Counted from the stretch's first letter, positions 546-59,460 are shown. The stretch: DNA of 64,000 nucleotides from IMGVR_UViG_3300042511_000879:62001-126000, one strand, 5' to 3'. Notes: generated by a model from the letters alone, not told the origin. A program made the numbers and translations.

Positions 546-1934
546 TTAACCTGCATTATAATCTGATAATGCATAGTCAGTTTGATTATAGTCTGTTGTT
601 ATAAGTTGTCCTTCGCCTAATTGTGACCAATATAAATTACTTACTCCTAAATAAACAATTTGAGGTAGTTTTTTAATTTTAAATTGTATACCTGAATTAT
701 TTGATGAGATTTGTGGATCATTTGAATCATTTGAAAGATCAATATCATACAAAGCGCTACTCTCTCCGGATTCATCTGCATCCACAAAAATAAGAGCTCC
801 TCCAATTAATTGAATTTCATCATTAGTTACACTTTTATATCCTTGACTATTAGGATCCGCAGACTGTGGATTATTAATAATTTGATATGAATATGAATTA
901 AGATCAGGAACTTGCCATTTGTAAAAATCAGGATTATTAGGATCAGTAATAACACCATCTGTCCACCTTTGTCCATTACAAACATACCAACCTAGATAAT
1001 CTCCAATTCCAGCTCCCATTTTTATTTTTATAGGATTATTTAGATCTGAATTTGTATCGATGATTTGACTATAAACAAATCTAGACGGGTCACTAAATAT
1101 TGAAGGTAATATAGAAATAATAGTACCTATTTTAACACTACCTCCTAATTCTTCTGTCGTTTTAAAAGTTACATTACCAGCACTGTTAATTGCAGTTACT
1201 ATTTTATTTACATCTGCGCCTTGATTCCCAATACGTAATGCTGCATTAAAAGTAACCTGTTTTTCAAAAAAAGTATTTCCTAGAGTTGATCCACCAGATG
1301 TTGAAATATTAAATAAATCAACTGCAGTATTTCCAGTACTTTTAATAATATGAGATTTTGCTTTTAAATTTAACTGTGAATTTTGATTATCAATAAAACC
1401 TAGATATAATTTAGATAATCCATCAGAATTATCCATGGTAATATCAAACGCATTACCAAAAACACCTGAACTTTTAAATCTTAAATTAGAAGCAACATTG
1501 CTACTACGTCTATTAACAACCCATTGATATTTTGGTAAACCATTGGGTTGCTGCTGTGCTTCATATCCAGTATCTTCATCTGTGTAGCCGGCAGCAATAA
1601 CAGAAGCATATAATGGAGCAGGATCGATATTGTCAATAGGATGCTTTGAAAACATAGTTGCCATTACATTTCCACCATCTATTAAATTCTGAGAAACGAC
1701 TACCCAATATGAATCAGAACCTCCTACGTCCGGTCCTTTGGTTCCTTGACTTCCTCTACCACCCTGAACTCCTAATGCTCCTTTAAATCCTTGAGCACCA
1801 TCATTTCCATTTGATCCTATATAACCTTTAGGACCTCCACCATTTGCAATAAGCTGATCAAAATTATAGTTAATTTTGTCCAGCTTAATATTATCAGTAT
1901 CGAGTACTCTTATCTGTTTAAGGTTAATTGTCAT
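546..1934 (-). CDS. Collagen-repeat, tail-collar-containing fibre protein
   Basis: N-terminal DKINYNFDQL baseplate-attachment-like motif, G-X-Y run (GPKGYIGSNGNDGAQGFKGALGVQGGRGSQGTKGP), collar motif IGTIISI...GWYVCNG...VPDLN. Confidence 0.8.
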   Translation of the reverse strand: MTINLKQIRVLDTDNIKLDKINYNFDQLIANGGGPKGYIGSNGNDGAQGFKGALGVQGGRGSQGTKGPDVGGSDSYWVVVSQNLIDGGNVMATMFSKHPIDNIDPAPLYASVIAAGYTDEDTGYEAQQQPNGLPKYQWVVNRRSSNVASNLRFKSSGVFGNAFDITMDNSDGLSKLYLGFIDNQNSQLNLKAKSHIIKSTGNTAVDLFNISTSGGSTLGNTFFEKQVTFNAALRIGNQGADVNKIVTAINSAGNVTFKTTEELGGSVKIGTIISILPSIFSDPSRFVYSQIIDTNSDLNNPIKIKMGAGIGDYLGWYVCNGQRWTDGVITDPNNPDFYKWQVPDLNSYSYQIINNPQSADPNSQGYKSVTNDEIQLIGGALIFVDADESGESSALYDIDLSNDSNDPQISSNNSGIQFKIKKLPQIVYLGVSNLYWSQLGEGQLITTDYNQTDYALSDYNAG

Positions 1935-1962
1935 TTAGATTTATATATTATTTTAATTATAA

Positions 1963-4275
1963 CTAACATTCCAATACGTCTATTATTTGACCAGTTGCCG
2001 ACGCTCCTCCTACGTTTAATTTTCCATAATCAACAGGAGATTCACCAAAAAGAGGACCATTCAAATATACTTTAGTATATTTACCAATTGTATTTGGTCT
2101 GTTTTGGTCTTTTATATTAATTAACGGAGGTGTAGCAGTTAATTCTCCAGTAATTAGTGAATATTCACCTTCATCCCATCCAACTGTAACATATAACGCA
2201 GATCCATAAGCCATAACATGTTCAGCTAGCGTTGTTCCAGATGGAGGAGGTGTTAACTCAGTATTTGCAGCAACATATGTTATGTGAATCATCTGCGTTG
2301 CATCACAAACAGATGCCGGTTCTGGCACTAATGGAGTAGGAGTAAGTTGGATTGCGCTATTATAACCCGGGTCATATAGATTGCCATTGCTTGGTTGGTA
2401 TATTTCTACTCTACAAACATAATCTCTAGTAAATGAAAAACCAACAAATATACTTCCATTCCAATATCTTCTAACTCCGGATGTACCTTCACGGTACCAT
2501 CCTTTAGGTGCATTAGTTCCGACAGGATACTCCGGTTGATCGTCAGACCATTTTAAAGTAGTCGCATTAATAAACAATGGTGCATTATACTGAAGATATA
2601 AATCACCAACAAAATTGCTAGGTCCATTTAATTCTTCAACAAGTAGGCTAGTTATCAAATTATTAGTTGTTCCTCCGCCACTACATGTAGCTCCTCTTTG
2701 AGTAAAATCAGTTCCATTCCAAAATATTGGATATCCATCAATATTTTTATACCATCCGGATGACACATAATCTGTTGTTCCATTATTAAACAATTTATAT
2801 GTTGAAGGAATTGTAAACGTATTCCAATCTGTGTTTCCAGTCCAACTATAATACATATCAACTGGAAGAGAGCACGACATAAGAGCTCCAATAGTTCCTG
2901 GTTTCATTATTGGTTCTGTTAGCGTAATTGCATTTGTAGTAATAGGAGGCACATAAACTCCAGTATTCGACCATTTTAAATCATGATTTTCTAAGTAAAC
3001 TATATGAATCATTCTACTAGTTTCGTAGAGTCCAGAAGTACCCATAGTAATAGAACTAATTCCAGGAGATGTATTATTATTTAGAAATTCATTAGTATAT
3101 CCTACGGTATATATTCCAGCTGCACTTGGTACTGCTGAAATTCGCATATCATATCCTCCAATTAATATTGGAGCATCTTCTAGAATTGTAATTGGATTTT
3201 GAGCATCACCATTAGCACCTATAGTATAACTAAAGTTATTTAGATTTGGAGTTAAAAATTGATTAAAACCGCCAACTGTTTCCCATGTCTCTCCATTGCA
3301 AAGATACCATCCTTCATAATCAGTACCTGCCTTTCCTCTTCCATAAATATTATTTAATGGAGAACCGGCAGTTACGTTTATCGAATCATTTAACCAAAAG
3401 TGATCAGTGATAAATTCATTTGCTCTAATTGAAACTATAGAACCTATTGGAAATGTTCCAAAAACGTCTTTAACGCTTTTCCATTCAACATCACCATTAG
3501 TATTTGTCGATACAAGAACCCTATCTTCAGCAGCACCTGGTGTAAATCTAAATACATCTTGAGATGTTACTATTGTTCCAGCTGCACTGCCTAAATTAAA
3601 TGGCCCACCAATCCCACCATTATTGATAGTAATTTGGGAGTCAGTAATAACGATTGAATTATTTAATAAAGAATTAGTAATGCTACCTGTTTTGAGCACT
3701 ATAGTCTGTGCAACATATATAATCTTAAAATTTGAATCTGTTAAATCCGGAGTAATCTCAAAATTTGGATTACTACTATTAGATCCAAACTTAAAATTAT
3801 AACCATTAAAACCTCCGTTATCTTCGACTCTTAGATTAACCCAAGAACTATCTTTAGTTTTTATAACTTGAATCGGCGTGTCAATTGGATTAACTCCATC
3901 ATTATATTCGCTATCATTACCTAGAAATCCAATTCTTAAAGCAACTGGCGCTGATTGAATATCAGTAGCAGGGTTTTTTCTAGGAAATAAATATCCCGGT
4001 AAACCATTACCTTCTGGAAAATAATCCCAATCATTTAAACTCTCTGCTCCTTGAGGACCTTGGTAACCTTGAAGACCCTTATATCCAGTGTCTCCTTGAG
4101 CTCCCATATTTCCATCTCCACCATCTGCTCCGATAGTACCCTGAGGCCCTGGCATTCCTCCATTTGAAAGCTGATCAAAATTATAATTAATCTTATCGAT
4201 TTTATCTTTAGACCACCAGACTCCACTATTTGGATTAAGATCGGTTACAAAAAGTTCTTTTATATTAATAGCCAT
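1963..4275 (-). CDS. Collagen-repeat, tail-collar-containing fibre protein (paralog of 546..1934)
   Basis: Same DKINYNFDQL motif, G-X-Y run (GPQGTIGADGGDGNMGAQGDTGYKGLQGYQGPQG), collar motif PIGSIVSI...GWYLCNG...TPNLN, long beta-rich C-terminal extension. Confidence 0.8.
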   Translation of the reverse strand: MAINIKELFVTDLNPNSGVWWSKDKIDKINYNFDQLSNGGMPGPQGTIGADGGDGNMGAQGDTGYKGLQGYQGPQGAESLNDWDYFPEGNGLPGYLFPRKNPATDIQSAPVALRIGFLGNDSEYNDGVNPIDTPIQVIKTKDSSWVNLRVEDNGGFNGYNFKFGSNSSNPNFEITPDLTDSNFKIIYVAQTIVLKTGSITNSLLNNSIVITDSQITINNGGIGGPFNLGSAAGTIVTSQDVFRFTPGAAEDRVLVSTNTNGDVEWKSVKDVFGTFPIGSIVSIRANEFITDHFWLNDSINVTAGSPLNNIYGRGKAGTDYEGWYLCNGETWETVGGFNQFLTPNLNNFSYTIGANGDAQNPITILEDAPILIGGYDMRISAVPSAAGIYTVGYTNEFLNNNTSPGISSITMGTSGLYETSRMIHIVYLENHDLKWSNTGVYVPPITTNAITLTEPIMKPGTIGALMSCSLPVDMYYSWTGNTDWNTFTIPSTYKLFNNGTTDYVSSGWYKNIDGYPIFWNGTDFTQRGATCSGGGTTNNLITSLLVEELNGPSNFVGDLYLQYNAPLFINATTLKWSDDQPEYPVGTNAPKGWYREGTSGVRRYWNGSIFVGFSFTRDYVCRVEIYQPSNGNLYDPGYNSAIQLTPTPLVPEPASVCDATQMIHITYVAANTELTPPPSGTTLAEHVMAYGSALYVTVGWDEGEYSLITGELTATPPLINIKDQNRPNTIGKYTKVYLNGPLFGESPVDYGKLNVGGASATGQIIDVLEC

Positions 4276-4278
4276 TAA

Positions 4279-7200
4279 TTATGCTTGTATTTTAACATGT
4301 ATTTTAAAGTTATATGAATATCCATATTTTTTATTATATATTAGTCTAAAACTTAAACCGTCATTTTGATAACTTTGAATATTGAAATTAGTTAACTCTA
4401 CATAATTATCAGCAGTTAATTGTGATGTTTGAGTAACCGACACGAAACTCGTTTCTAATCCCTTACCTTCAATTCCATAAATTTTAATTGAATCAATAAT
4501 AAAACGAGGGGATATATTTGATTTTGAATAGATTTGCAAATCATCTTTTATCGAAGATTTATCTCCATATGAATTTGCAGCTTTAACGTATCTTCCGAAA
4601 TATCTTTCAATTCCATCTTCAGTTAATTCATTTAATATTGCAGTTGATAAATAAAAATCTGCAATTACTTGAGATTCATCTTCAATCCAATGTATGGATG
4701 CTGTATTAGATTGTACAAACCTAATTTTATCTAAAACTTCAATTGAAAGCTCTTGAACATTATCAAATTTAGTTATATCATAAGTATCTCTGACCTTCAT
4801 GATTGTTGATGCCATGAATGTTTTCTTTTCTACAGGACTTAATGTTCCATTTGTTGTTTCAGATTCTCCACCACTAAGGGCTCTTGTGAAATAATCTTTA
4901 GAATACTTAGATTTAAAAACATTAATCTCTTTTTTATCAATTGCAATCTCTCCAATCATCGGATATAATGGTAATTTATCAGTTGTTTGAGAAAGTTTTA
5001 ATATATTTTTCGAGTCTTGCTCATTAACTTTATGATAAAAATAGTTACTAATAAAACCATAGTTGTTTGTATTTTCTTTAAAAGAATCAAAAGAGATTCC
5101 TTTACCATTTAACTTGTTGTACGCAATTAAAACAGATTCTTTTAACGCAGTTGTTGGAACTAATGGATCCTCTTCTATTTTAAGTACTTTTTTATCTGAA
5201 TTAATATCTGAAAAAGTTATAATATCATTAAAAATAGGATTATAATCTCCATTCATTCTTCTCAAAATAGATACATATCCTCCATCTTTTCTATCTTCTA
5301 CGATATTACCAATTTGATTTGAAGATAGTCTAAACGCTTTTGGTCTTTCTGGATCTGAAGTTGGTTGTATAATAGAAGGTTTAACAACATCGACACCTGA
5401 TTCTACCGAAAGAACAAAATCATTTTTTGATAGAGTTCCATCTTCAGCAATTGTAACATAGTTTACTTGTCCAAATGAATTAAATCTTTTAGAATATTTA
5501 TAAGCACTAATTGAATCTAATAAATTTGCAAACTCATTTTTACCTCCTTGTGAATAATCAAAAGGTCCAGTTTCAGCTACCAAAGACATAAATTGTGGAT
5601 CTAATCGACCCTCTAGAGGATATGGAGCAATAGGCGGATCATTAGGATTTATTGGTTGCGTCGGATTCGGTACAAATTTATACGGGTGTCCACTTACTAA
5701 TATTGAAGTGTCATCAATAACATCGATAACTTTTACTGCGTATGTATCTCCTGTCACTGTGAAATATATCCATGAATATTCGCCAATAGAATTTCTCTTA
5801 ACAAACTCAGTAAACTTCGCAGTGCCATTATTTATTGATATAATCGATGCCTTAATAATAAAAGGAGTATCAGGGTCTGAATCTGGCTCTGGAGTTGATC
5901 CAATAAAATCAATACGAAATGGAATTCTAGTATCTATAATATCACCGCCTAATGTTAAATCGTTTATAGTGTATAGCAAGTATCTATTAATATCTTCTTC
6001 TGTTATGTCATTTTCAATAATCTTTAATTCTATGTTAACACAAATAAATTTAAACTTGTCATTTTTAACACAATTAAAAACAATTGAATTTGATGGAATA
6101 GTATCATCGCTACTGTATGACAGATATGCTCCAAACTTATAATCACTTATGTCAATTCCTTTCAAGAACTCAGTTGGAATTTCATTTGTAATTTCTTTTC
6201 TTTTTTGGAAAACATATCTAAGACCTCTAAAAACTGCCGATGAATTTTTTTCAAAATTACCTATATCAAATTTAGACCATAATCTTTTTGATTTATTATC
6301 AAACCACGACTGTGCAGAGTTGCTTGTATCAAAATAACCAGTCCAATTAAAATGTTTATCAAAATAATTAAACGTAGTACTTTTTAATTTATCAATGGTT
6401 AATCCTCCATCACCTGCAAAATCTAAATAATTATTTAAGTCTTTTCTAGAGCCTAAAATGCTAGTTGGAATTCTATTTAAGTGAAAATGTTCCATATTCA
6501 AGGATTCAATATTTCTTTTTGAATCCAATTCTATATTTGGCGATAAATTATCATCTCCAAACGCCTCGTTTACATTTAAAACATAAGGTAAATTTCTACC
6601 ATTTGATGAATTCTTAAGTTCATATTTACAAATAGTCGGAACAACTCTACTTAAAAGAGCAGTTTCCTTAAGACTATTTTCTTTAAGACGGTCATATTCA
6701 TTTAAGAGTTGAGTTTTTGCGACTGTTTCTGAAGTTTCCGCGGATAAAATATCTCTAAGACCTGAATAGAATAATGATGCAGTAGTTGTTGAAGACTCAT
6801 CAAAATCATAAACCAAATCTCCTAGGTCTGAGTTTCTTGTTGAGTAAAAATCAAAATCAAAATCTTTAAAATCATATGCAGCAAATTTACCATGAACCGT
6901 TTTATATTCATCATAAACCTCATATACTCTATCATTTGAAAGTTTTGTAGCTCTATCTAAAATAACTCTATAGTAATTTGTATCAAATGGGTCTTGGTTA
7001 ATCTCTATAATTCTAACAAATTTATCAGAATCTTTTTGTTTTAAGTATTCTCCAACTTGAACATTTCCAATTTCTGAAGATTTAACAAGAACTGATTGTC
7101 CTTCAGATGATCCAGCAATAGTTGTCCATATATTCCAAACATTTGGAATATTAGCGTTTAGTCCAATATCATCAAATTCACCATTATCAACATTAATAAA

Positions 7201-31155: not shown

Positions 31156-31646
31156 TAAATTACTATTTTACCGTTACCGATTTTAATATTAGTATCTCCT
31201 TCTTTTAAGATATTTGGAGGTAAAATTTGTTTTGCTCCATTTGGTTTTTGTGCTGCTTTTCTTTGTAAATATTCAAGTCGTTTAGCATCTTTAATTGGAA
31301 GTCTTTTAGTATCGACAAACTGGTCTCTAATTGAAGGTTCATTTGTTGTATTTAAAATTTTAATTTCTTTGACAACTTTAAGAGCTTCTCTATGGTTTGG
31401 AATATTAAGAACATCTCCTAATTTTATAGAAAATGGATTTGAAATGCCATTCCATTTTAATATGTAATCACAGTAGTTTGCATTTCTATAATATAGTAAT
31501 GAAATTAAATCAATTCTACCAACCTGATCCTCAGTAACAGTATGTTCATTTATTGTTTCATTGTTTTCAATAAATACAAGAGTAGGCTTGGTAAATTTAT
31601 ATCTACCATCTACTAATTTCTTTTTATTTAGTGTATCAAACTGCAT
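31155..31646 (-). CDS. Baseplate wedge protein, gp53/LysM-like
   Basis: GRIDLISLLYYRNANYCDYILKWNGISNPFSIKLGDVLNIP is the gp53/LysM pattern. Confidence 0.8.
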   Translation of the reverse strand: MQFDTLNKKKLVDGRYKFTKPTLVFIENNETINEHTVTEDQVGRIDLISLLYYRNANYCDYILKWNGISNPFSIKLGDVLNIPNHREALKVVKEIKILNTTNEPSIRDQFVDTKRLPIKDAKRLEYLQRKAAQKPNGAKQILPPNILKEGDTNIKIGNGKIVI

Positions 31647-54593: not shown

Positions 54594-55298
54594 CTATTTG
54601 AATCTGGGAGTATTGATCCTGGGAGAGTTGAAACGGAGATTAGGCGCGGAGATACTCTTCTGTTTATAAGCTGGGCCTAGGTCCCTTTCTGGTGCCTTAT
54701 AAGGGGACATTGTATTTGTCTTGTCAAAACTTGTTATAGGGAATGGGGCTGGTTCCGATACCTTATTATTAGATGGGTCATATTGTTTTTGGCTAGTACG
54801 TTTTATAGGTGCACTATCTGGTTGTTTATTAACATTTGCGTTAGGGTCTCCATTATCGTGCCCGAAGTCACTATCTATAGAACCTCTATCTCCACCTGTA
54901 TTGTTTGCTATCATATTACCCATTTGTGCATCTATAAGAGATTCTTTAAACCCCTTAGAACGAGGTTGAGGTGTTTGAGCTATATCGGTTTCCTTAGTTG
55001 GTGTTTGGGCCTGATCGCTTGACGATAGTGTTTGTTTATCGTATTGGACATTTTGATTGGCTGGATTATTTTGCTTTCGGGCAGTATCTGAGGTTGCCTT
55101 ATTACCCTGTTGGGTTTGAGCATTAACATCACTTCCAGCCTTATTTATACCCGTTGCATCTATAGGAGATATTGAACTGTCTCCTGGGGATGGATTTAAA
55201 CTACTAGGAACTGATGAGGTATCTGTCTTATTAGAGGTTTGAGTCTTAGCAGCATTTACCCTATCGCTTATACTAATTTGAGTTAGACCTATCTTCAT
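54594..55298 (-). CDS. Low-complexity, probably disordered S/T/Q/P/D-rich protein
   Basis: 705-nt open frame with few hydrophobic residues. Confidence 0.6.
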   Translation of the reverse strand: MKIGLTQISISDRVNAAKTQTSNKTDTSSVPSSLNPSPGDSSISPIDATGINKAGSDVNAQTQQGNKATSDTARKQNNPANQNVQYDKQTLSSSDQAQTPTKETDIAQTPQPRSKGFKESLIDAQMGNMIANNTGGDRGSIDSDFGHDNGDPNANVNKQPDSAPIKRTSQKQYDPSNNKVSEPAPFPITSFDKTNTMSPYKAPERDLGPAYKQKSISAPNLRFNSPRINTPRFK

Positions 55299-55444: not shown

Positions 55445-55876
55445 TTATGCTTCCATTGGAACTTGGTAAGGAACGTATGCTCTATCAGCCCAAGTTTTAG
55501 CTCCTACTGCGCTATATTGTGCTTGGTTATAAAGGTTTGTATTTCTATATAGTTGATTAATCGTACCTACTGTTAGGTTACCCATTATTAACTCATCCAT
55601 TAAGACTATTTTGTTCCCTTTACGGGCGAATAATGTTAGGTAATAATCTCCACCATCTGGGCAGAATTCAACTGTTTGTAAGGCACTTTTATTATAACCT
55701 GTGATGATTGATTCTGGGTAGGTCATGAAATATTCGTTTTCATAGTCTTTAGCATCTACTATGGTCATCCAACCCGCTTTACATTTTGTTATGAAACGGA
55801 ATTTACCTTTTGTGTTTGGAAAGGCTCCTAATACGTTTACTGTTCGTACGTCTGTTGTGTTTACTAAATTTGTCAT
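55445..55876 (-). CDS. Hypothetical protein under a class-1 promoter
   Basis: ORF track; promoter at 55901-55931. Confidence 0.7.
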   Translation of the reverse strand: MTNLVNTTDVRTVNVLGAFPNTKGKFRFITKCKAGWMTIVDAKDYENEYFMTYPESIITGYNKSALQTVEFCPDGGDYYLTLFARKGNKIVLMDELIMGNLTVGTINQLYRNTNLYNQAQYSAVGAKTWADRAYVPYQVPMEA

Positions 55877-55887
55877 AATGGTGTGTT

Positions 55888-56032
55888 TTAATTAGATATG
55901 TAAATATAATCATTATTTGTGATTCCGGAAACTGTTTGCGCAAGTATTTTCAGAAAGTTATTAACAATTGTTGTTCATAAGTTTTTTGAGAAACTGTTTC
56001 GGGATTCATATAAATTGATTATATTTACATAT
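55888..56032. promoter_or_regulatory. Divergent pair of class-1 promoters
   Basis: Minus: TTTC(55931-55928)-N19-TATATTTA(55908-55901). Plus: TTTC(55997-56000)-N19-TATATTTA(56020-56027). Confidence 0.85.
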
Positions 56033-56039
56033 GAAAAAT

Positions 56040-56165
56040 AGCAAAATGACATAACGGGTTCGTATAGCACAAAGAATCGAGAGATTCGACACGGGCGGTC
56101 CTTTAAACCAGGGGAGGAAGAGTAGACTCCAGCTCGTCTTCTATTTAGAGGTCTGAAACGCCACT
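56040..56165 (+). ncRNA. Candidate small structured RNA
   Basis: Lies directly downstream of a class-1 promoter, has no usable ORF (ATG...TAA after 7 codons), is GC-richer, and contains a GAATC-GAGA-GATTC GNRA hairpin plus nested stems. Confidence 0.45.
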
Positions 56166-56167
56166 AG

Positions 56168-56245
56168 AAACTTTAACAAAAAATTAACATAAAATAGTTT
56201 CGGTTCTTGAAACTATTGATTATATTTACATATCTAATTAAAACA
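56168..56245 (+). promoter_or_regulatory. Class-1 promoter
   Basis: TTAACA repeats, TTTC(56198-56201)-N19-TATATTTA(56221-56228)CATATCTAATT. Confidence 0.85.
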
Positions 56246-56252
56246 AAGAACT

Positions 56253-56447
56253 ATGAAAATCACCATCAACATCCTTCCAGCCTTAGGTTCCCTAATCGCG
56301 TTCGGGCTTACGTATTCCTTATTAACTGGAACTCTTCAAAAATTCATACCATTCCATGGTACCCTTAATGAAATGACAACTACAATATGTCTATTTTGGA
56401 TAGGTACTCTTTTATTGTTCTGCTCATTCGAAAAATTTAACAAATAA
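56253..56447 (+). CDS. Small membrane protein (two hydrophobic helices)
   Basis: ORF track; follows a class-1 promoter. Confidence 0.6.
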   Translation: MKITINILPALGSLIAFGLTYSLLTGTLQKFIPFHGTLNEMTTTICLFWIGTLLLFCSFEKFNK

Positions 56448-56496
56448 TACTGAAACAAAACCAATTTTTAATATATAAATCTAAAATCTTATAACT

Positions 56497-57633
56497 ATGG
56501 CAATTGCAACTCTTTCTAACACCTTAATTGAACAACGTAAAGTAGCTACATTGGAGGCTCAAAACCTTCGTAAAGTAGTACCATTCCGCGATATCAATTT
56601 AATAGATGGTGAATCTATCGAATATAATGGTCAAAAAATTAACCTTACACCTACTGCATTCAAAAATCTTTTAGGTCTATTAGGTATGAGTAACCAATTT
56701 GCTCAGAAATTCGAATCTCTCTTTACTAAAGAGGCTAAATCTCAGTTTATCAACACTATGAAAAATGCAATGGCATCTAATAGTGGTAAACTTTCTGAAG
56801 TAACCCTTGTACTTAACCCTATTAGTAAATCGGTAGTGGCTATCACCAAGAAAGATCAATTTGGTATATCTAACCAACAATTCATGGGAGTTGCTGAGAA
56901 TATCATAGATAACCACGGTATGAACGTAACAAACTGGTCAGTAGACCCAGGAACTGGTATTGTAACTATTAATGCATTTAATCCTAAAGCGAATTTCGCA
57001 GTTCAAGGTTTATCTGATGAGGTATTTACTGGAGGTGTTACTTTCAAAAATTCACCTAAAGATGGTTTCCAAGTTCTTCCTTATGTTAATCGTCAGTTTT
57101 GTACTAATGGTTTAACTACTGCGTTTGCTGAGGAGTCTTATACTCTTCAATCTTTGGACCAAGGTTCTATGGAAAAGTTCTTTGAAAATATGAACGAATT
57201 ACGTAAGAATAACTTTGCTCCTACTGGTTTTGCTGACCGTGTAAGAATGGCTCATAACACTCCTGCTTCCCTAAGCGAATTACAGTTTGCACATAACCTT
57301 ATTGAACCATATGCTGGAGAACGTTCTAACACTTGGATTCCTTATGCTGAAAACATGAATGCATTCTATAATGCTGGTTTTGATAACATATCTGGTCAAC
57401 AGATGAAACATGCTAAATCAAATACTTCTGTATGGGATGTTATCAATGGTGTTACTCACTTTGCAACCCATGGTGCTGGTATTATCGATACAGACATGCA
57501 AGACTATAATGCATCTGAATTAATGGTAAAATCTGGTAACCTATTCGGTAAAAAAGCTTTTGACCACGAAAATACTATGCCAGACCTTTTTAGAGGTAGA
57601 GACTTAGTACGTAGTGGTTCATTATTAAACTAA
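56497..57633 (+). CDS. DUF932-like phage/plasmid protein
   Basis: FKNSPKDG...RQFCTNGL and TSVWDVINGVTHFATH match the DUF932 NSxDG...RxxCxNG and WxxxNxxT motifs. Confidence 0.65.
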   Translation: MAIATLSNTLIEQRKVATLEAQNLRKVVPFRDINLIDGESIEYNGQKINLTPTAFKNLLGLLGMSNQFAQKFESLFTKEAKSQFINTMKNAMASNSGKLSEVTLVLNPISKSVVAITKKDQFGISNQQFMGVAENIIDNHGMNVTNWSVDPGTGIVTINAFNPKANFAVQGLSDEVFTGGVTFKNSPKDGFQVLPYVNRQFCTNGLTTAFAEESYTLQSLDQGSMEKFFENMNELRKNNFAPTGFADRVRMAHNTPASLSELQFAHNLIEPYAGERSNTWIPYAENMNAFYNAGFDNISGQQMKHAKSNTSVWDVINGVTHFATHGAGIIDTDMQDYNASELMVKSGNLFGKKAFDHENTMPDLFRGRDLVRSGSLLN

Positions 57634-57660
57634 TATTTGGTAGTCTGCATATCGGAATTA

Positions 57661-57691
57661 AAGGGACCATTCTCACATAGGTCCCTTTTTT
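57661..57691 (+). terminator. Intrinsic terminator
   Basis: AAGGGACC...GGTCCCTT stem followed by a T run, after the DUF932-like gene. Confidence 0.8.
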
Positions 57692-57699
57692 ATGTGAAA

Positions 57700-57780
57700 T
57701 TGTTAATAACTTTTTGAAAATAATTTGAAAAACTGTTTCCAGTGTCGTGGATATTGATTATATTTACATATCTAATTTTA
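57700..57780 (+). promoter_or_regulatory. Class-1 promoter
   Basis: AATTGTTAATAAC box, TTTC(57736-57739)-N19-TATATTTA(57759-57766). Confidence 0.85.
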
Positions 57781-57793
57781 ACAAAGAAACACC

Positions 57794-58267
57794 ATGATGA
57801 CTCAAGCACAAATCACCGAACAAAACGAAATCGAATCTAAATTGGCTCATAACTACGAGTTGACTCACAGAGAGAATATGATTTTACTATATTCTGATTT
57901 TCATAAGGATGCCTACGGTTTCCGTCCTCGTACTATTAATGTATATGCCTTAACCACTGAGGAACTGGAGGCTGATTTTGACCGTTTCGAAGCGACATGT
58001 AAGATTAATAGACACGAAGAGGAAATGGCCGAAATGGAGGCTGATATCGCGTTCCGTGCCCTTATAACTAATACAATCGCTATAGGTGCAAACGATGAGG
58101 TTACTGCATTACGTTGGATCGCTGAAGGTGCTGTAGAAGATTATGGTTATGACTATGAGCATTTCCTTTGGAACCAAGGTATAGCATACTCTGCCTACGG
58201 TAAGGAGTTGGCTAAGAGATTTGCTCCTATCTGGGGTAAAGCTCTTCAAACCCAGAAAGTTGCATAA
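57794..58267 (+). CDS. Hypothetical phage protein
   Basis: YSDFHKDAYGFRPR motif; has its own class-1 promoter. Confidence 0.7.
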   Translation: MMTQAQITEQNEIESKLAHNYELTHRENMILLYSDFHKDAYGFRPRTINVYALTTEELEADFDRFEATCKINRHEEEMAEMEADIAFRALITNTIAIGANDEVTALRWIAEGAVEDYGYDYEHFLWNQGIAYSAYGKELAKRFAPIWGKALQTQKVA

Positions 58268-58269
58268 AC

Positions 58270-58340
58270 TTTAACAAACTTTTAACATTTAAAAGTTTCC
58301 GGTTTCCACAATATTGATTATATTTACATATCTAATTAAA
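58270..58340 (+). promoter_or_regulatory. Class-1 promoter
   Basis: TTAACA repeats, TTTC(58296-58299)-N19-TATATTTA(58319-58326). Confidence 0.85.
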
Positions 58341-58350
58341 ACACCACATT

Positions 58351-59460
58351 ATGAACAGACAATCTTACTTAATCCGCACACAACCTAACGAATTCATCGT
58401 TTTAGTAAACACGAAAAACCCAATTGACACCCTCTTAATCGAGCCTGGTCATTCAAAATATACTTGGGTCCAAAACCAAGACGCTAACCGTATTATCAAC
58501 ATCACCGAAACTGGTAGATGGACAAGTAATAAGGACTATAATAACGATTACGGAACCTCAACATCTAAACAACCTCAATCGGTTAACCCTTGTGCCCCTG
58601 TTGAGGTTACACTTACCAAATTAGACGACTTAAATATCGATGATTCCCTATTTACCAGCCTTCCAACTGGAACTATCTTTGACCAGTTTTGTTCAACTGA
58701 AGGTGGATTCTTACCTGGAACTAATATAATGGCTGCTGGAGCTCCTGGTGTCGGTAAAACAACAGTGCTATTAGAACTTCTATCTAAGCTATCTGCTCAA
58801 GGTAAACGGGTCTTATTTATATCTGCCGAAATGAACCAGATAGATATGGCACGTTACCTTAAAAGATTCCCACACTGGGGACAATTACCTATCCTTTTCC
58901 TATCTGACTACACTGAGTCTTGTCCAAAAGGAGTAATTGAAGGTGTACTTAACCAAGGATGGGACGTTGTCTTAACCGATTCATATACCGAAGTTAACGA
59001 TACCATCAAGGAGGAATGTAACATGACCAGAGGTAAAACCGAAAAATGGTTCCTAGACCTAATGACTCAGCATAATAAAGGTGGTAACAAGACGAAAACA
59101 TATACAACCTTCGTAACTATCCTGCAATTATCTAAAGGTGGTAATTTCGTTGGTTCTAATAAACTGAAACACATGACAACTGCGATGATGATGTTGGACT
59201 GGGACGGAAACGAAAACTCAGGTAGAAGGTTCATGGAGTTCTCTAAAAACAGAACAGGTCAAGTCGGTAAAAAACTATATTTCGAATTATCAGATGGTGT
59301 TTCCTTCGACGAAGGCCGATATACAAGAGACCTATTTAACGACGAGGTCCTAGCTGAGGAAAGAAAAGCCCTAACAGGAGAAAGTAATGCCTTCGACAAA
59401 CTATTCGGTTTCGACAAGGATGCCGTACCTGAGGAATTAAAAACCCTGGTAGAACTATAA
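58351..59460 (+). CDS. RadA/Sms-like RecA-fold ATPase without Zn finger or Lon-like domain
   Basis: GGFLPG...GAPGVGKTT, VLFISAEM, LTDS, GSNKLKHMTTAMM and KNRTG (compare RadA KNRFG). Confidence 0.75.
   Translation: MNRQSYLIRTQPNEFIVLVNTKNPIDTLLIEPGHSKYTWVQNQDANRIINITETGRWTSNKDYNNDYGTSTSKQPQSVNPCAPVEVTLTKLDDLNIDDSLFTSLPTGTIFDQFCSTEGGFLPGTNIMAAGAPGVGKTTVLLELLSKLSAQGKRVLFISAEMNQIDMARYLKRFPHWGQLPILFLSDYTESCPKGVIEGVLNQGWDVVLTDSYTEVNDTIKEECNMTRGKTEKWFLDLMTQHNKGGNKTKTYTTFVTILQLSKGGNFVGSNKLKHMTTAMMMLDWDGNENSGRRFMEFSKNRTGQVGKKLYFELSDGVSFDEGRYTRDLFNDEVLAEERKALTGESNAFDKLFGFDKDAVPEELKTLVEL

What the first reader, a model, noticed from the sequence alone, without database searches (positions are those of the whole stretch)
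56040..56165. Promoter-driven ~120-nt ORF-less structured transcript, first unit of the plus-strand cassette
Seen: a dedicated class-1 promoter (56020) and only a 7-codon ORF. Hairpin GAATC-GAGA-GATTC (56074-56087). Outer pairs GGCG(56094-97)/CGCC(56159-62) and CCTTTAAA(56100-07)/TTTAGAGG(56144-51) enclose GGAG/CTCC and GAAGA/TCTTC alternatives. The run CAGG-GGAG...CTCC-AGC loosely recalls the SRP helix-8 internal loop but lacks its GNRA cap. Inference: an early small RNA of unknown class (anti-defence decoy, ribozyme or regulator).
Basis: partly seen in the sequence, partly recalled or inferred. Interest (0 to 1): 0.6.

Follow-up and report, generated by a model that had tools for sequence, protein, structure and literature searches.

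The report
Conserved phage small-RNA gene family
This short stretch of a 236-kb phage genome is a real gene for a small folded RNA: it belongs to a family absent from the RNA-family catalogue searched, found in dozens of aquatic phage contigs, built around a conserved three-armed core, and its function is still unknown.

Summary
The promoter motif at 56015-56032 is one of 26 in the genome, and the only one not followed by the standard leader plus a gene. It drives four things in order. First comes an almost invariant 24-nt A-rich leader (56031-54) that reads as a 7-codon ORF with a nested 2-codon ORF. The core is P-beta, a variable hairpin P3, and a GAG-UAGA-CUC mini-hairpin. Compensatory changes support P2 and P3. 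A covariance model of the core finds it in about 40 IMG/VR contigs, in 30 or more metagenome contigs, and 7 times in phage-like contigs of one MAG. The contexts differ: own host-type promoter, bare leader, or after a small ORF. There is no Rfam 15 family, no tRNA or tmRNA, no match in 151 sampled Bacteroidota genomes, and no conserved neighbouring gene. An RNA-library contig covers 56024-56267. The function is not shown. My best guess (about 0.4) is a trans-acting RNA whose core is a binding scaffold or decoy. Rivals are a ribozyme, a seed-pairing sRNA, a 3'-end element and a minigene.

The parts
55997..56032 (+). Promoter. TTTC (55997-56000), a 19-nt spacer, then TATATTTA (56020-27), all inside or just upstream of the repeated 18-nt motif at 56015-56032. 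It resembles the Bacteroidota sigma-A pattern of -33 TTTG and -7 TAnnTTTG. The start site is inferred to lie at or within about 3 nt of the A of ATG (56031).
   Evidence: Motif count: 10 against 0.86 expected; 26 genome-wide, only 4 on the + strand; alignment A1. Relatives of the RNA sit behind canonical TTTG-N19/20-TAnnTTTG. The consensus itself is from my own knowledge (Bayley 2000; Chen 2007). The start site was not measured.
56031..56054 (+). A 24-nt A-rich 5' leader. It reads as the mini-ORF MKNSKMT* and contains a nested two-codon ORF, AUG ACA UAA (56046-54).
   Evidence: Positions 1-10 and 16-23 are invariant in every copy that was found without using this sequence as bait. Among 31 variants only positions 11, 12, 14, 15 and 24 vary, and the frame and stop are always kept. 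Translation was not tested.
56058..56068 (+). P1, a marginal 3-bp hairpin (GUU / AGC) in this copy. Most relatives have a clearer 3-5 bp hairpin with a different sequence.
   Evidence: Relatives show GCU/AGC, GCCA/UGGC, GGCC/GGCC, UCC/GGA, GCC/GGC, GGUC/GACC and CUCC/GGAG. No stable hairpin is predicted for the window copy or for L042, L050, L064 and L083.
56074..56087 (+). P2, a 5-bp hairpin with a GNRA tetraloop (GAAUC-GAGA-GAUUC).
   Evidence: 97-98% of cells are paired, and 4 of 5 pairs show changes on both sides. The GNRA loops read correctly only on the + strand.
56088..56092 (+). Linker GACAC. It is GACAN in this clade and GAGAC in the wider family.
   Evidence: Alignments A5, A6 and A8.
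56091..56137 (+). The three-way-junction core that defines the wider family.
- P-beta: 56091-96 pairs with 56132-37.
- P3: 56099-103 pairs with 56111-15, with a 7-nt loop.
- Junction: GGAA.
- P5: GAG (56120-22), loop UAGA, CUC (56127-29).
- One C at 56130.
   Evidence: Alignment A8 of 33 sequences: 88.9% of cells paired against 72.7% in shuffles. All five P3 pairs show double changes. P-beta is 82% paired and P5 98%. Model R2 scores this site at E = 2e-10 and finds a single copy in the genome. The MFE fold of the window copy recovers P2 and P-beta.
56138..56166 (+). Variable 3' tail with a U-rich run (TCTTCTATTT, 56138-47). Relatives have an AU-rich hairpin and/or a U run here. The 3' end is not defined.
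   Evidence: The consensus scan finds no terminator in the window copy. The RNA-library contig runs on to 56267.
56167..56233 (+). Upstream element (GAAACTTTAACAAAAAATTAACA) and the next copy of the promoter motif (56216-33). This marks the end of the unit; it is not part of the RNA's conserved structure.

Best explanation
What it is (shown). It is a separate small-RNA gene of a phage-borne family that is not in Rfam 15. A strong promoter of the phage's main repeated class drives a transcript of about 105-135 nt. The transcript has an unstructured A-rich 24-nt 5' leader, two small hairpins, and a conserved three-way-junction core: 5' GGG(Y), then a variable hairpin, then a purine-rich junction, then GRG-UAGA-CUC, then C, then the closing strand.

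How it most likely works (inferred). The RNA acts in trans. The core is a recognition scaffold whose junction and UAGA mini-hairpin are held by a partner that is conserved across hosts. That partner could be a host protein or RNP, or a small ligand. The RNA would then titrate, block or redirect the partner, which is a decoy or sponge mode.

The 24-nt leader is an add-on specific to this clade. It has start codons in an A-rich context typical of Bacteroidota, and I infer that it loads a ribosome at the 5' end. That would stabilise the RNA, or bring the core to the translation machinery.
For: Independent unit. It is the only one of 26 class-1 promoters without the standard CTAATTAAAAC leader plus gene, and it is followed by the next promoter. 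L081 has two tandem copies, each with its own promoter.

Structure. There are compensatory changes in P2 and P3, and P-beta and P5 are kept. The strand is fixed by the GNRA loops.

The core is the functional module. The same core occurs with quite different 5' parts:
- behind a canonical TTTG-N19-TAnnTTTG promoter plus one hairpin;
- behind a class-1 promoter and a bare leader (L144 twice, L148);
- behind a TATAAT-type promoter (L122, L154);
- after a 44-aa ORF (L149).

Dosage. There are 2 copies in L081, L144 and G006, and 7 in phage-like contigs of G012. This suits a stoichiometric role.

No conserved neighbouring gene, and the family spans promoter types. This points to a partner that does not travel with the RNA.

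Expression. An RNA-library contig covers 56024-56267 in X1, and a 701-nt contig at depth 130 carries the L019-type copy in X5.

Leader. It is invariant at the nucleotide level while P1-P3 turn over. Short ORFs recur at the 5' end of other subfamilies, for example AUG GGA CCA UAA and UAG in the two G006 copies.
Against: No partner was identified, and no binding, decoy or sponge activity was tested.

About 28 nearly invariant nucleotides around a junction is a pattern at least as typical of ribozymes and aptamers as of protein-binding RNAs.

The L149-type copies lie in a 3' UTR with no promoter of their own. That fits a cis-acting element better.

The window copy has no recognisable terminator, and the RNA contig reads into the next gene, so a discrete small RNA is not proven. 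The runs are contigs at low depth and could contain DNA.

Predicted folding energy is no better than shuffles.

The leader's invariance is partly an ascertainment effect in the metagenome set, which was collected with a pattern taken from the leader itself.
Confidence: 0.4

Rival explanations
1. A new small self-cleaving ribozyme, or a substrate for an RNA-processing enzyme. The three-way junction with its invariant junction and loop nucleotides would be a catalytic or processing core that cuts whatever transcript carries it.
For: The sequence is strongly conserved exactly at the junction and in the small P5 loop, while P3 varies freely in sequence and length.

The core occurs in many unrelated contexts and in tandem or multiple copies: after promoters, after an ORF, between genes. 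Known small ribozymes in phages are distributed the same way (my own knowledge).

The size, about 50 nt, is like a hammerhead.
Against: No Rfam ribozyme model matches, even at E<=10.

The junction strands are 0, 4 and 1 nt long, and there is no CUGANGA or GAAA, so it is not a hammerhead (inspection of A8).

Many members have a dedicated promoter only about 25 nt upstream, which leaves little to process.

No read ends or joints were seen at a fixed site, although the data are contigs only.
Confidence: 0.15
2. A base-pairing regulatory sRNA. The invariant single-stranded 24-nt 5' end would be a seed that pairs with a host or phage mRNA. The hairpins and the core would serve as a stabilising or chaperone-binding 3' body.
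For: The 5' 24-mer is the most conserved part in this clade, is predicted to be unpaired, and sits at the very 5' end, as in many enterobacterial sRNAs (my own knowledge).

Its nucleotide-level invariance includes third codon positions.
Against: The phage genome holds no complementary site: none with 5 or fewer mismatches, and one with 6, apart from the locus's own opposite strand.

Duplex energies with the five neighbouring mRNAs are no better than shuffles, z from -1.0 to +1.8.

The wider family lacks this leader altogether, so pairing cannot be the family's general mode.

An A-rich seed would pair only with U-rich sites. The host is unknown, so host targets could not be searched.
Confidence: 0.15
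3. A cis-acting 3'-end element. The core would be a special terminator, or a block to 3' exonucleases, that closes short transcription units. The unit in the window would be a decayed small gene (7 codons left) in front of it.
For: The core is always the last conserved thing before the next promoter or before a convergent gene.

In most relatives it is followed by CUUAUAUUUUUU-like U-rich tracts.

In L149 and L151 it follows a real 44-aa ORF.
Against: There is only one copy among the 26 class-1 promoter units of this genome, so it is not the general terminator.

Many members are a promoter plus the RNA with no cargo at all.

The window copy has no U tract that passes the scan.

The RNA contig runs through it.

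A simple terminator does not need an invariant junction and loop.
Confidence: 0.12
4. The mini-ORF is the point. It would be a leaderless or short-leader minigene (7 codons, or the nested AUG ACA UAA) whose translation matters in itself. Possible modes are peptidyl-tRNA drop-off as with lambda bar minigenes, a ribosome trap, or a heptapeptide product. The downstream structure would be accessory.
For: The start and the stop are kept in all 31 variants, including the change from UAA to UAG.

The second AUG has A at -1 to -3 and at -6. Among the class-1 genes the AUG lies about 14-32 nt after the motif; here the second AUG lies 13 nt after it, so just short of the shortest.

Short ORFs recur in other subfamilies.

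The lambda bar precedent is a two-codon minigene in an early operon (my own knowledge).
Against: Codons 2, 3 and 7 never show synonymous changes, which argues for an RNA-level rather than a peptide-level constraint.

Most of the wider family has no mini-ORF.

An adaptive role for minigenes has never been shown, and translation was not tested here.
Confidence: 0.08

Closest known systems
Orphan structured RNA motifs of phages and metagenomes found by comparative genomics (the kind catalogued in Rfam from the Breaker/Weinberg surveys)
   Same: It is a short intergenic element defined by covarying helices plus a few invariant junction nucleotides. It is phage-borne, sometimes multi-copy, and has no assigned function.
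   Different: None of the 4227 Rfam 15 models matches this locus or 14 related loci. This family has a compact three-way junction with a GRG-UAGA-CUC arm. In the window clade it also carries a 24-nt mini-ORF leader.
Hammerhead-type small ribozymes (three-way junction, about 50 nt)
   Same: It has three helices around a small conserved junction and one variable arm. It occurs in phages, in varied contexts and in repeated copies.
   Different: The junction strands are 0, 4 (CAGA or GGAA) and 1 (C) nt long, with none of the hammerhead core (CUGANGA, GAAA, UH). There is no Rfam match. Catalysis was not tested.
Lambda bar minigenes (two-codon ORFs in the early PL operon)
   Same: It is a tiny ORF (AUG ACA UAA nested in a 7-codon ORF) directly behind a strong promoter of the phage's main class, with no gene attached.
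   Different: The bar minigenes are not joined to a conserved structured RNA. Here the nucleotide sequence, not only the frame, is invariant. The effect on tRNA pools or ribosomes is unknown.
Signal recognition particle RNA, helix 8
   Same: Only a loose run of letters is shared (CCAGG..GGAGG..AGC).
   Different: There is no GNRA-capped helix 8 and no conserved loop motifs. The SRP models do not match at E<=10. The letters concerned are not conserved in types II and III of the family.
Decoy or sponge RNAs (6S RNA, CsrB-type RNAs, phage RNA anti-CRISPRs)
   Same: It is a small RNA with its own promoter, in some genomes multi-copy, and with no coding role. The proposed mode of action is titration of a partner.
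   Different: It has no sequence or fold likeness to any of them. It has no repeat units and no open-promoter mimic. The partner is unknown.

Membership tests
SRP RNA (Rfam RF00169 / RF01854) | Helix 8 with a GNRA cap and conserved symmetric and asymmetric loops, scored by the family covariance models | tested here: not met
   No match at the gathering score or at E<=10 on 55850-56300.
tRNA / tmRNA | Cloverleaf or tRNA-like domain, with a tag ORF for tmRNA | tested here: not met
   ARAGORN finds none in the window or in 22 related loci. There is no Rfam match. The letters GAUUCGAC.GGG and GGUUCGA recall tmRNA and T-loops, but here they lie in helices that covary.
Known small self-cleaving ribozymes (hammerhead, twister, twister-sister, pistol, hatchet, HDV-like) | Match to the family model, or the class-specific core nucleotides | tested here: not met
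   No Rfam match even at E<=10. The hammerhead core letters are absent from A8.
Self-cleaving ribozyme of any class, including a new one | Site-specific self-scission | not testable with these tools
   This needs an in-vitro cleavage assay. The contig-level RNA data show no fixed ends.
Riboswitch / cis-regulatory leader | An aptamer directly upstream of the gene it controls, with an expression platform | tested here: not met
   The unit is followed by a complete further promoter. In relatives it is followed by a convergent gene or another promoter.
Intrinsic terminator | A G+C-rich hairpin followed at once by a U tract | tested here: inconclusive
   The scan finds none at 55800-56500. Many relatives do have U-rich tracts 6-15 nt after P-beta.
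Minigene / leader peptide | A conserved start, frame and stop in a very short ORF near the 5' end | tested here: met
   All 31 variants keep AUG..AUG ACA UAA or UAG. Translation itself was not testable.
Seed-pairing trans sRNA | A conserved unpaired seed and a complementary target | tested here: inconclusive
   The seed-like 24-mer is conserved and unpaired. No target was found in the phage genome or in neighbouring mRNAs. The host genome is unknown.
Lambda nut boxB / HK022 put antitermination RNA | A promoter-proximal hairpin with a conserved GNRA-like loop (boxB), or the two-hairpin put fold | tested here: not met
   The GNRA loop of P2 is replaced by UAACC, CUAACC and AGC loops in type III, and by 9-nt loops in the wider family. 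Every downstream gene has its own promoter.
The new three-way-junction core family (model R2, built here) | P-beta, P3 and the GRG-UAGA-CUC arm, with the conserved junction | tested here: met
   The window copy scores 52 bits, E = 2e-10.

The most novel reading that the evidence does not exclude
The conserved three-way junction (GGUUCG ... CGCAGAG-GGUAGA-CUCC-RACCU) is the active centre of a new functional RNA class carried by phages. One option is a new small self-cleaving ribozyme. The other is an RNA 'sponge' aptamer that soaks up a host immune signal or factor. That would explain its strong promoters, its multiple copies and its spread across unrelated phages.
Probability: 0.15. Interest if true: 0.9.

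Novelty: new variant of a known kind. Interest (0 to 1): 0.6.

Why it matters
Phage-encoded small RNAs with their own promoters are rare and mostly uncharacterised outside enterobacterial phages. This family is defined by covariation. It is spread over large and small phages of aquatic bacteria (the promoters suggest mainly Bacteroidota hosts), is present in up to seven copies, and matches no catalogued family.

It gives a compact (about 50 nt) and easily synthesised core to test for catalysis, ligand binding or protein binding. In the window clade it also offers a natural fusion of that core to a minimal translated leader.

If the core turns out to be a decoy for a host factor, or a new ribozyme, it would add an RNA-based tool to the known phage repertoire. 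If it is only a stability or termination element, it is still a useful annotation that stops this region being called empty.

Tried and rejected
- Rfam 15 at gathering scores on the window and on 14 related loci, and at E<=10 on three short stretches, gave only chance-level snoRNA and miRNA hits.
- ARAGORN found nothing.
- GenBank phage collection, near and distant modes: no relative of the locus.
- One viral-contig scan was wasted on a mis-spaced pattern.
- Searching 185,579 prokaryote genomes for the leader plus junction gave 0 hits. A 19-base core pattern gave 28 hits, about the number expected by chance; only L107 was real.
- Model R2 in four Bacteroidota MAGs and in 151 sampled Bacteroidota genomes: no match. 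Filters were strict and only 39 candidates were scored per genome, so this means 'not found', not 'absent'.
- The alternative pairing P-alpha (GGG with CUC of ACUCC) lost to P-beta (GGGYY with the strand after ACUCC), which is kept across L128's inserted hairpin; L066 turns a G.U pair into A-U.
- tRNA-like, permuted-tRNA, T-arm plus D-arm, HDV-like, GTPase-centre, L1-stalk, 5S loop E and SRP Alu likenesses were all considered by eye. Each failed on pairing or on conservation.
- The divergent upstream neighbours (133-184 aa) are not homologous to each other. Larger neighbours are of mixed kinds: endolysin, methyltransferase, tail fibre, nitroreductase.
- Phage ribosomal protein S21 does not co-occur with the RNA; it is in 1 of the 4 RNA-bearing records searched.
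- There is no antisense match to neighbouring mRNAs.
- Three literature searches found no description of such an RNA.
- The large protein searches, structure prediction and complex prediction were not used. The question is about an RNA, and no claim here rests on proteins binding.

Full report
**1. What is at the coordinates**

The window is part of a 236-kb IMG/VR virus record (G000:C1:62001-126000; 34% G+C).

At 56015-56032 lies an exact copy of an 18-nt motif, TTGATTATATTTACATAT. The motif occurs 10 times in the window against 0.86 expected, and 26 times in the genome at up to 2 mismatches. In 24 of the other 25 copies it is followed by a conserved A-rich leader (CTAATTAAAACAAAG-like) and, about 14-32 nt on, the ATG of a gene (the mismatched copy at 31215 has neither). 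Only the copy at 56015 continues differently.

Here the ATG overlaps the end of the motif. The reading frame is ATG AAA AAT AGC AAA ATG ACA TAA (56031-56054). No other ORF lies before the next promoter copy at 56216.

The stretch 56050-56149 has 48% G+C, against 23-37% around it. It lies at a strand switch. Only four of the 26 promoters point rightwards, and all four lie at 56015-58314 in window coordinates.

**2. The promoter**

The motif with its upstream TTTC (55997-56000) and a 19-nt spacer fits the Bacteroidota sigma-A pattern: -33 TTTG, -7 TAnnTTTG. That consensus is from my own knowledge. Distant members of the RNA family sit behind textbook versions of it, TTTG-N19/20-TAccTTTG.

By that analogy the transcript should start at, or within about 3 nt of, the A of the first ATG. 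This is an inference. No start site was measured.

**3. Relatives**

The neighbouring 378-aa protein (PHROG 1362, function unknown) was used as bait, independently of the RNA. It brought in 30 viral loci.

The element is present at the same place in those loci whose neighbour protein is at least 80% identical. It is also present, 0.5 kb upstream of that protein, in L019, where the protein is only 63% identical. It is absent from that place in L009 and L030 (77% identical) and in the rest.

A pattern taken from the leader then found 38 metagenome contigs, giving 31 distinct variants. L081 carries two tandem copies, each with its own promoter.

**4. The fold**

The single sequence folds no better than shuffles: z = -0.01, +0.44 and +0.27. 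The evidence for structure is therefore comparative.

In type III relatives it is replaced by GGGU/ACCC, GGGA/UCCC and GGGAU/AUCCC stems with other loops. On the model-fitted alignment 97% of cells pair, and four of five pairs show changes on both sides.

*P3.* P3 is UCCUU/GGGGA in the window (56099-103 with 56111-15). In relatives it is CGCU/AGCG, CGAC/GUCG, CGAA/UUCG, CCUUU/AAAGG or CCCU/AGGG.

*P1.* P1 is a short hairpin of changing sequence in most relatives. It is marginal in the window copy and absent in four variants.

GGAG/CUCC is broken in L042, L064, L078 and L083.

**5. The wider family**

A 19-base core pattern run over prokaryote genomes gave about the number of hits expected by chance. 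One hit was real. It is a 7.8-kb AT-rich contig binned into a Saccharibacteria MAG, and it held five small intergenic units ending in the same ...GGUU-hairpin-(C)A(A)AGAG(GG)UAGACUCC-RAC....

Two further scans of IMG/VR added 28 contigs. An alignment of 33 cores (A8) supports a three-way junction:
- P-beta: GGGYY pairs with the five bases after ACUCC.
- P3: a variable hairpin.
- A four-base purine-rich junction.
- P5: GRG-UAGA-CUC.
- One C.

In A8, 88.9% of cells pair, against 72.7% in shuffles and 55% or less when the partners are slid. All five P3 pairs have double changes. P-beta is 82% paired with UA, CG and UG types. P5 is 98% paired, with A-U alternating with G.U.

Two more observations favour P-beta over the alternative GGG/CUC pairing. 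L066 changes a G.U pair to A-U. L128 keeps the closing strand across an inserted hairpin.

In the window, P-beta is 56091-96 with 56132-37, and the MFE fold recovers it. The core model R2 finds one copy in G000, one each in G005 and G007, two in G006, two in L144, and seven in G012. It finds none in G001.

**6. Contexts**

The core occurs in five settings:
- Behind a canonical Bacteroidota-type promoter plus one hairpin. This is an RNA of about 80 nt, usually antisense to its flanking genes.
- Behind the class-1-like promoter with only the standard leader, in 270-kb relatives of this phage (L144 twice, L148).
- Behind a TATAAT-type promoter (L122, L154).
- After a 44-aa membrane-protein ORF and a hairpin followed by seven U (L149, L151).
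- With a three-codon ORF, AUG GGA CCA UAA or UAG, in the two G006 copies.

Neighbouring proteins are unrelated to one another. There is no Rfam family, tRNA or tmRNA in any of these loci. There was no match in four Bacteroidota MAGs or in 151 sampled Bacteroidota genomes; given the filters, read that as 'not found'.

**7. The leader**

In every copy found without using the leader as bait, positions 1-10 and 16-23 are identical, while P1-P3 have turned over.

Among 31 variants, only positions 11, 12, 14, 15 and 24 vary. The peptides are MKNNKMT (24 variants), MKNNNMT (4), MKNSKMT (2) and MKNKTMT (1). The stop is always kept.

The lack of any synonymous change in codons 2, 3 and 7 argues for a constraint on the RNA, or on ribosome binding, rather than on a peptide. 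The second AUG has an A-rich context, and its leader is one base shorter than the shortest gene leaders of this promoter class.

The phage genome contains no complementary site (none with 5 or fewer mismatches and one with 6, apart from the locus's own opposite strand). Duplexes with neighbouring mRNAs are at chance level.

**8. Expression**

Only contig-level RNA libraries were available.

In run X1, a 244-nt contig with 2 mismatches covers exactly 56024-56267. That is from just upstream of the ATG, through the core, and into the next gene. In run X5, a 701-nt contig at depth 130 carries the L019-type copy.

This shows presence in RNA libraries. It does not give the ends, the strand or the level, and DNA carry-over cannot be excluded.

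**9. Interpretation**

*Shown:* a conserved, covarying, promoter-driven non-coding unit whose three-way-junction core defines a phage-borne family absent from Rfam 15.

*Inferred:* that it acts in trans as a binding scaffold or decoy. I put this at about 0.4. The reasons are that:
- the core is the only constant part across very different transcripts;
- it has strong promoters and can be multi-copy;
- it has no travelling partner gene;
- it crosses promoter types.

The leader in this clade most likely loads a ribosome, either to stabilise the RNA or to deliver the core.

*Rivals:*
- A new self-cleaving ribozyme or processing element (0.15). The conservation pattern and the scattered contexts fit; the dedicated promoters and the lack of any core likeness to known classes do not.
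- A seed-pairing sRNA (0.15).
- A 3'-end terminator or stabiliser (0.12).
- A minigene (0.08).

Its fold and its SRP analogy are not.

**10. Novelty**

This is a new family within a known kind, phage-encoded structured small RNAs. I found no description of it in three full-text searches. That is weak evidence, because subscription papers are not covered.

Noticed in passing
window 19667-58331 (10 copies); genome-wide 26 copies: The 'class-1' promoter is a long composite. It has one of two upstream elements (ACTTTAACAAAANNTTAACA or TTGTTAATAACTTTTTGAAAATA, about 50-75 nt upstream), then GTTTCCGG, then TTGATTATATTTACATAT, then a conserved 5' UTR CTAATTAAAACAAAG. It looks like a Bacteroidota sigma-A promoter (-33 TTTC, -7 TAtaTTTA) with extra sites, possibly for a regulator.
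   Followed up: partly
window 56015-59460: The rightward genes form a 3.4-kb island in a genome otherwise read leftwards: 4 of 26 class-1 promoters point right. The island holds the RNA, a 64-aa membrane protein, a 378-aa protein (PHROG 1362, unknown), a 157-aa protein (PHROG 21968, unknown) and a 369-aa KaiC/DnaB-C-like P-loop ATPase.
   Followed up: partly
L081:2380-3030 (- strand): There is a tandem duplication of the whole unit (promoter, 24-nt leader, P1, P2, core). The copies lie 209 nt apart, with different 3' hairpins. The second copy has TTTATATATG in place of TTTACATATG in its promoter.
   Followed up: yes
L107 (contig C85 of MAG G012) 1480-4880, plus C163 and C200: A 7.8-kb AT-rich contig binned as Candidatus Saccharibacteria carries five copies of the core on one strand, antisense to its protein genes, and two more copies lie on other contigs. 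The MAG is 2.3 Mb, which is large for that group, so these contigs are probably phage DNA binned by mistake.
   Followed up: partly
L131 and L135 (G006:C1:277087-277138 and 281324-281376, - strand): Two paralogous copies in a 344-kb phage share a 5' extension of about 90 nt containing AUG GGA CCA UAA in one and UAG in the other. This is a second, unrelated mini-ORF in front of the same core.
   Followed up: no
L128:4197-4290 and L142:1500-1600 (- strand): Some copies carry an extra hairpin inserted after ACUCC, followed by a second ..ACUCC-AAC.. This suggests that the 3' strand of the junction tolerates insertions or has been duplicated.
   Followed up: no
window 54594-55298 (- strand): A 234-aa ORF that is very rich in S, T, N, P, Q and D, so of low complexity. 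It has no Pfam or PHROG match.
   Followed up: no
L020:3340-3440; loose end at window 57697 in run X5: In some relatives a tRNA gene lies directly upstream of a class-1-type promoter. The X5 RNA contig ends in GGGTTCGAATCCCAC..., and L020 shows a tRNA-like GGTTCGAATCC stretch. The window itself has no tRNA.
   Followed up: no
G007:C1:62148-62306: One RNA-bearing phage record encodes a ribosomal protein S21 homologue (29 bits, above the Pfam cut-off). The other three RNA-bearing records and G001, which lacks the RNA, do not.
   Followed up: yes
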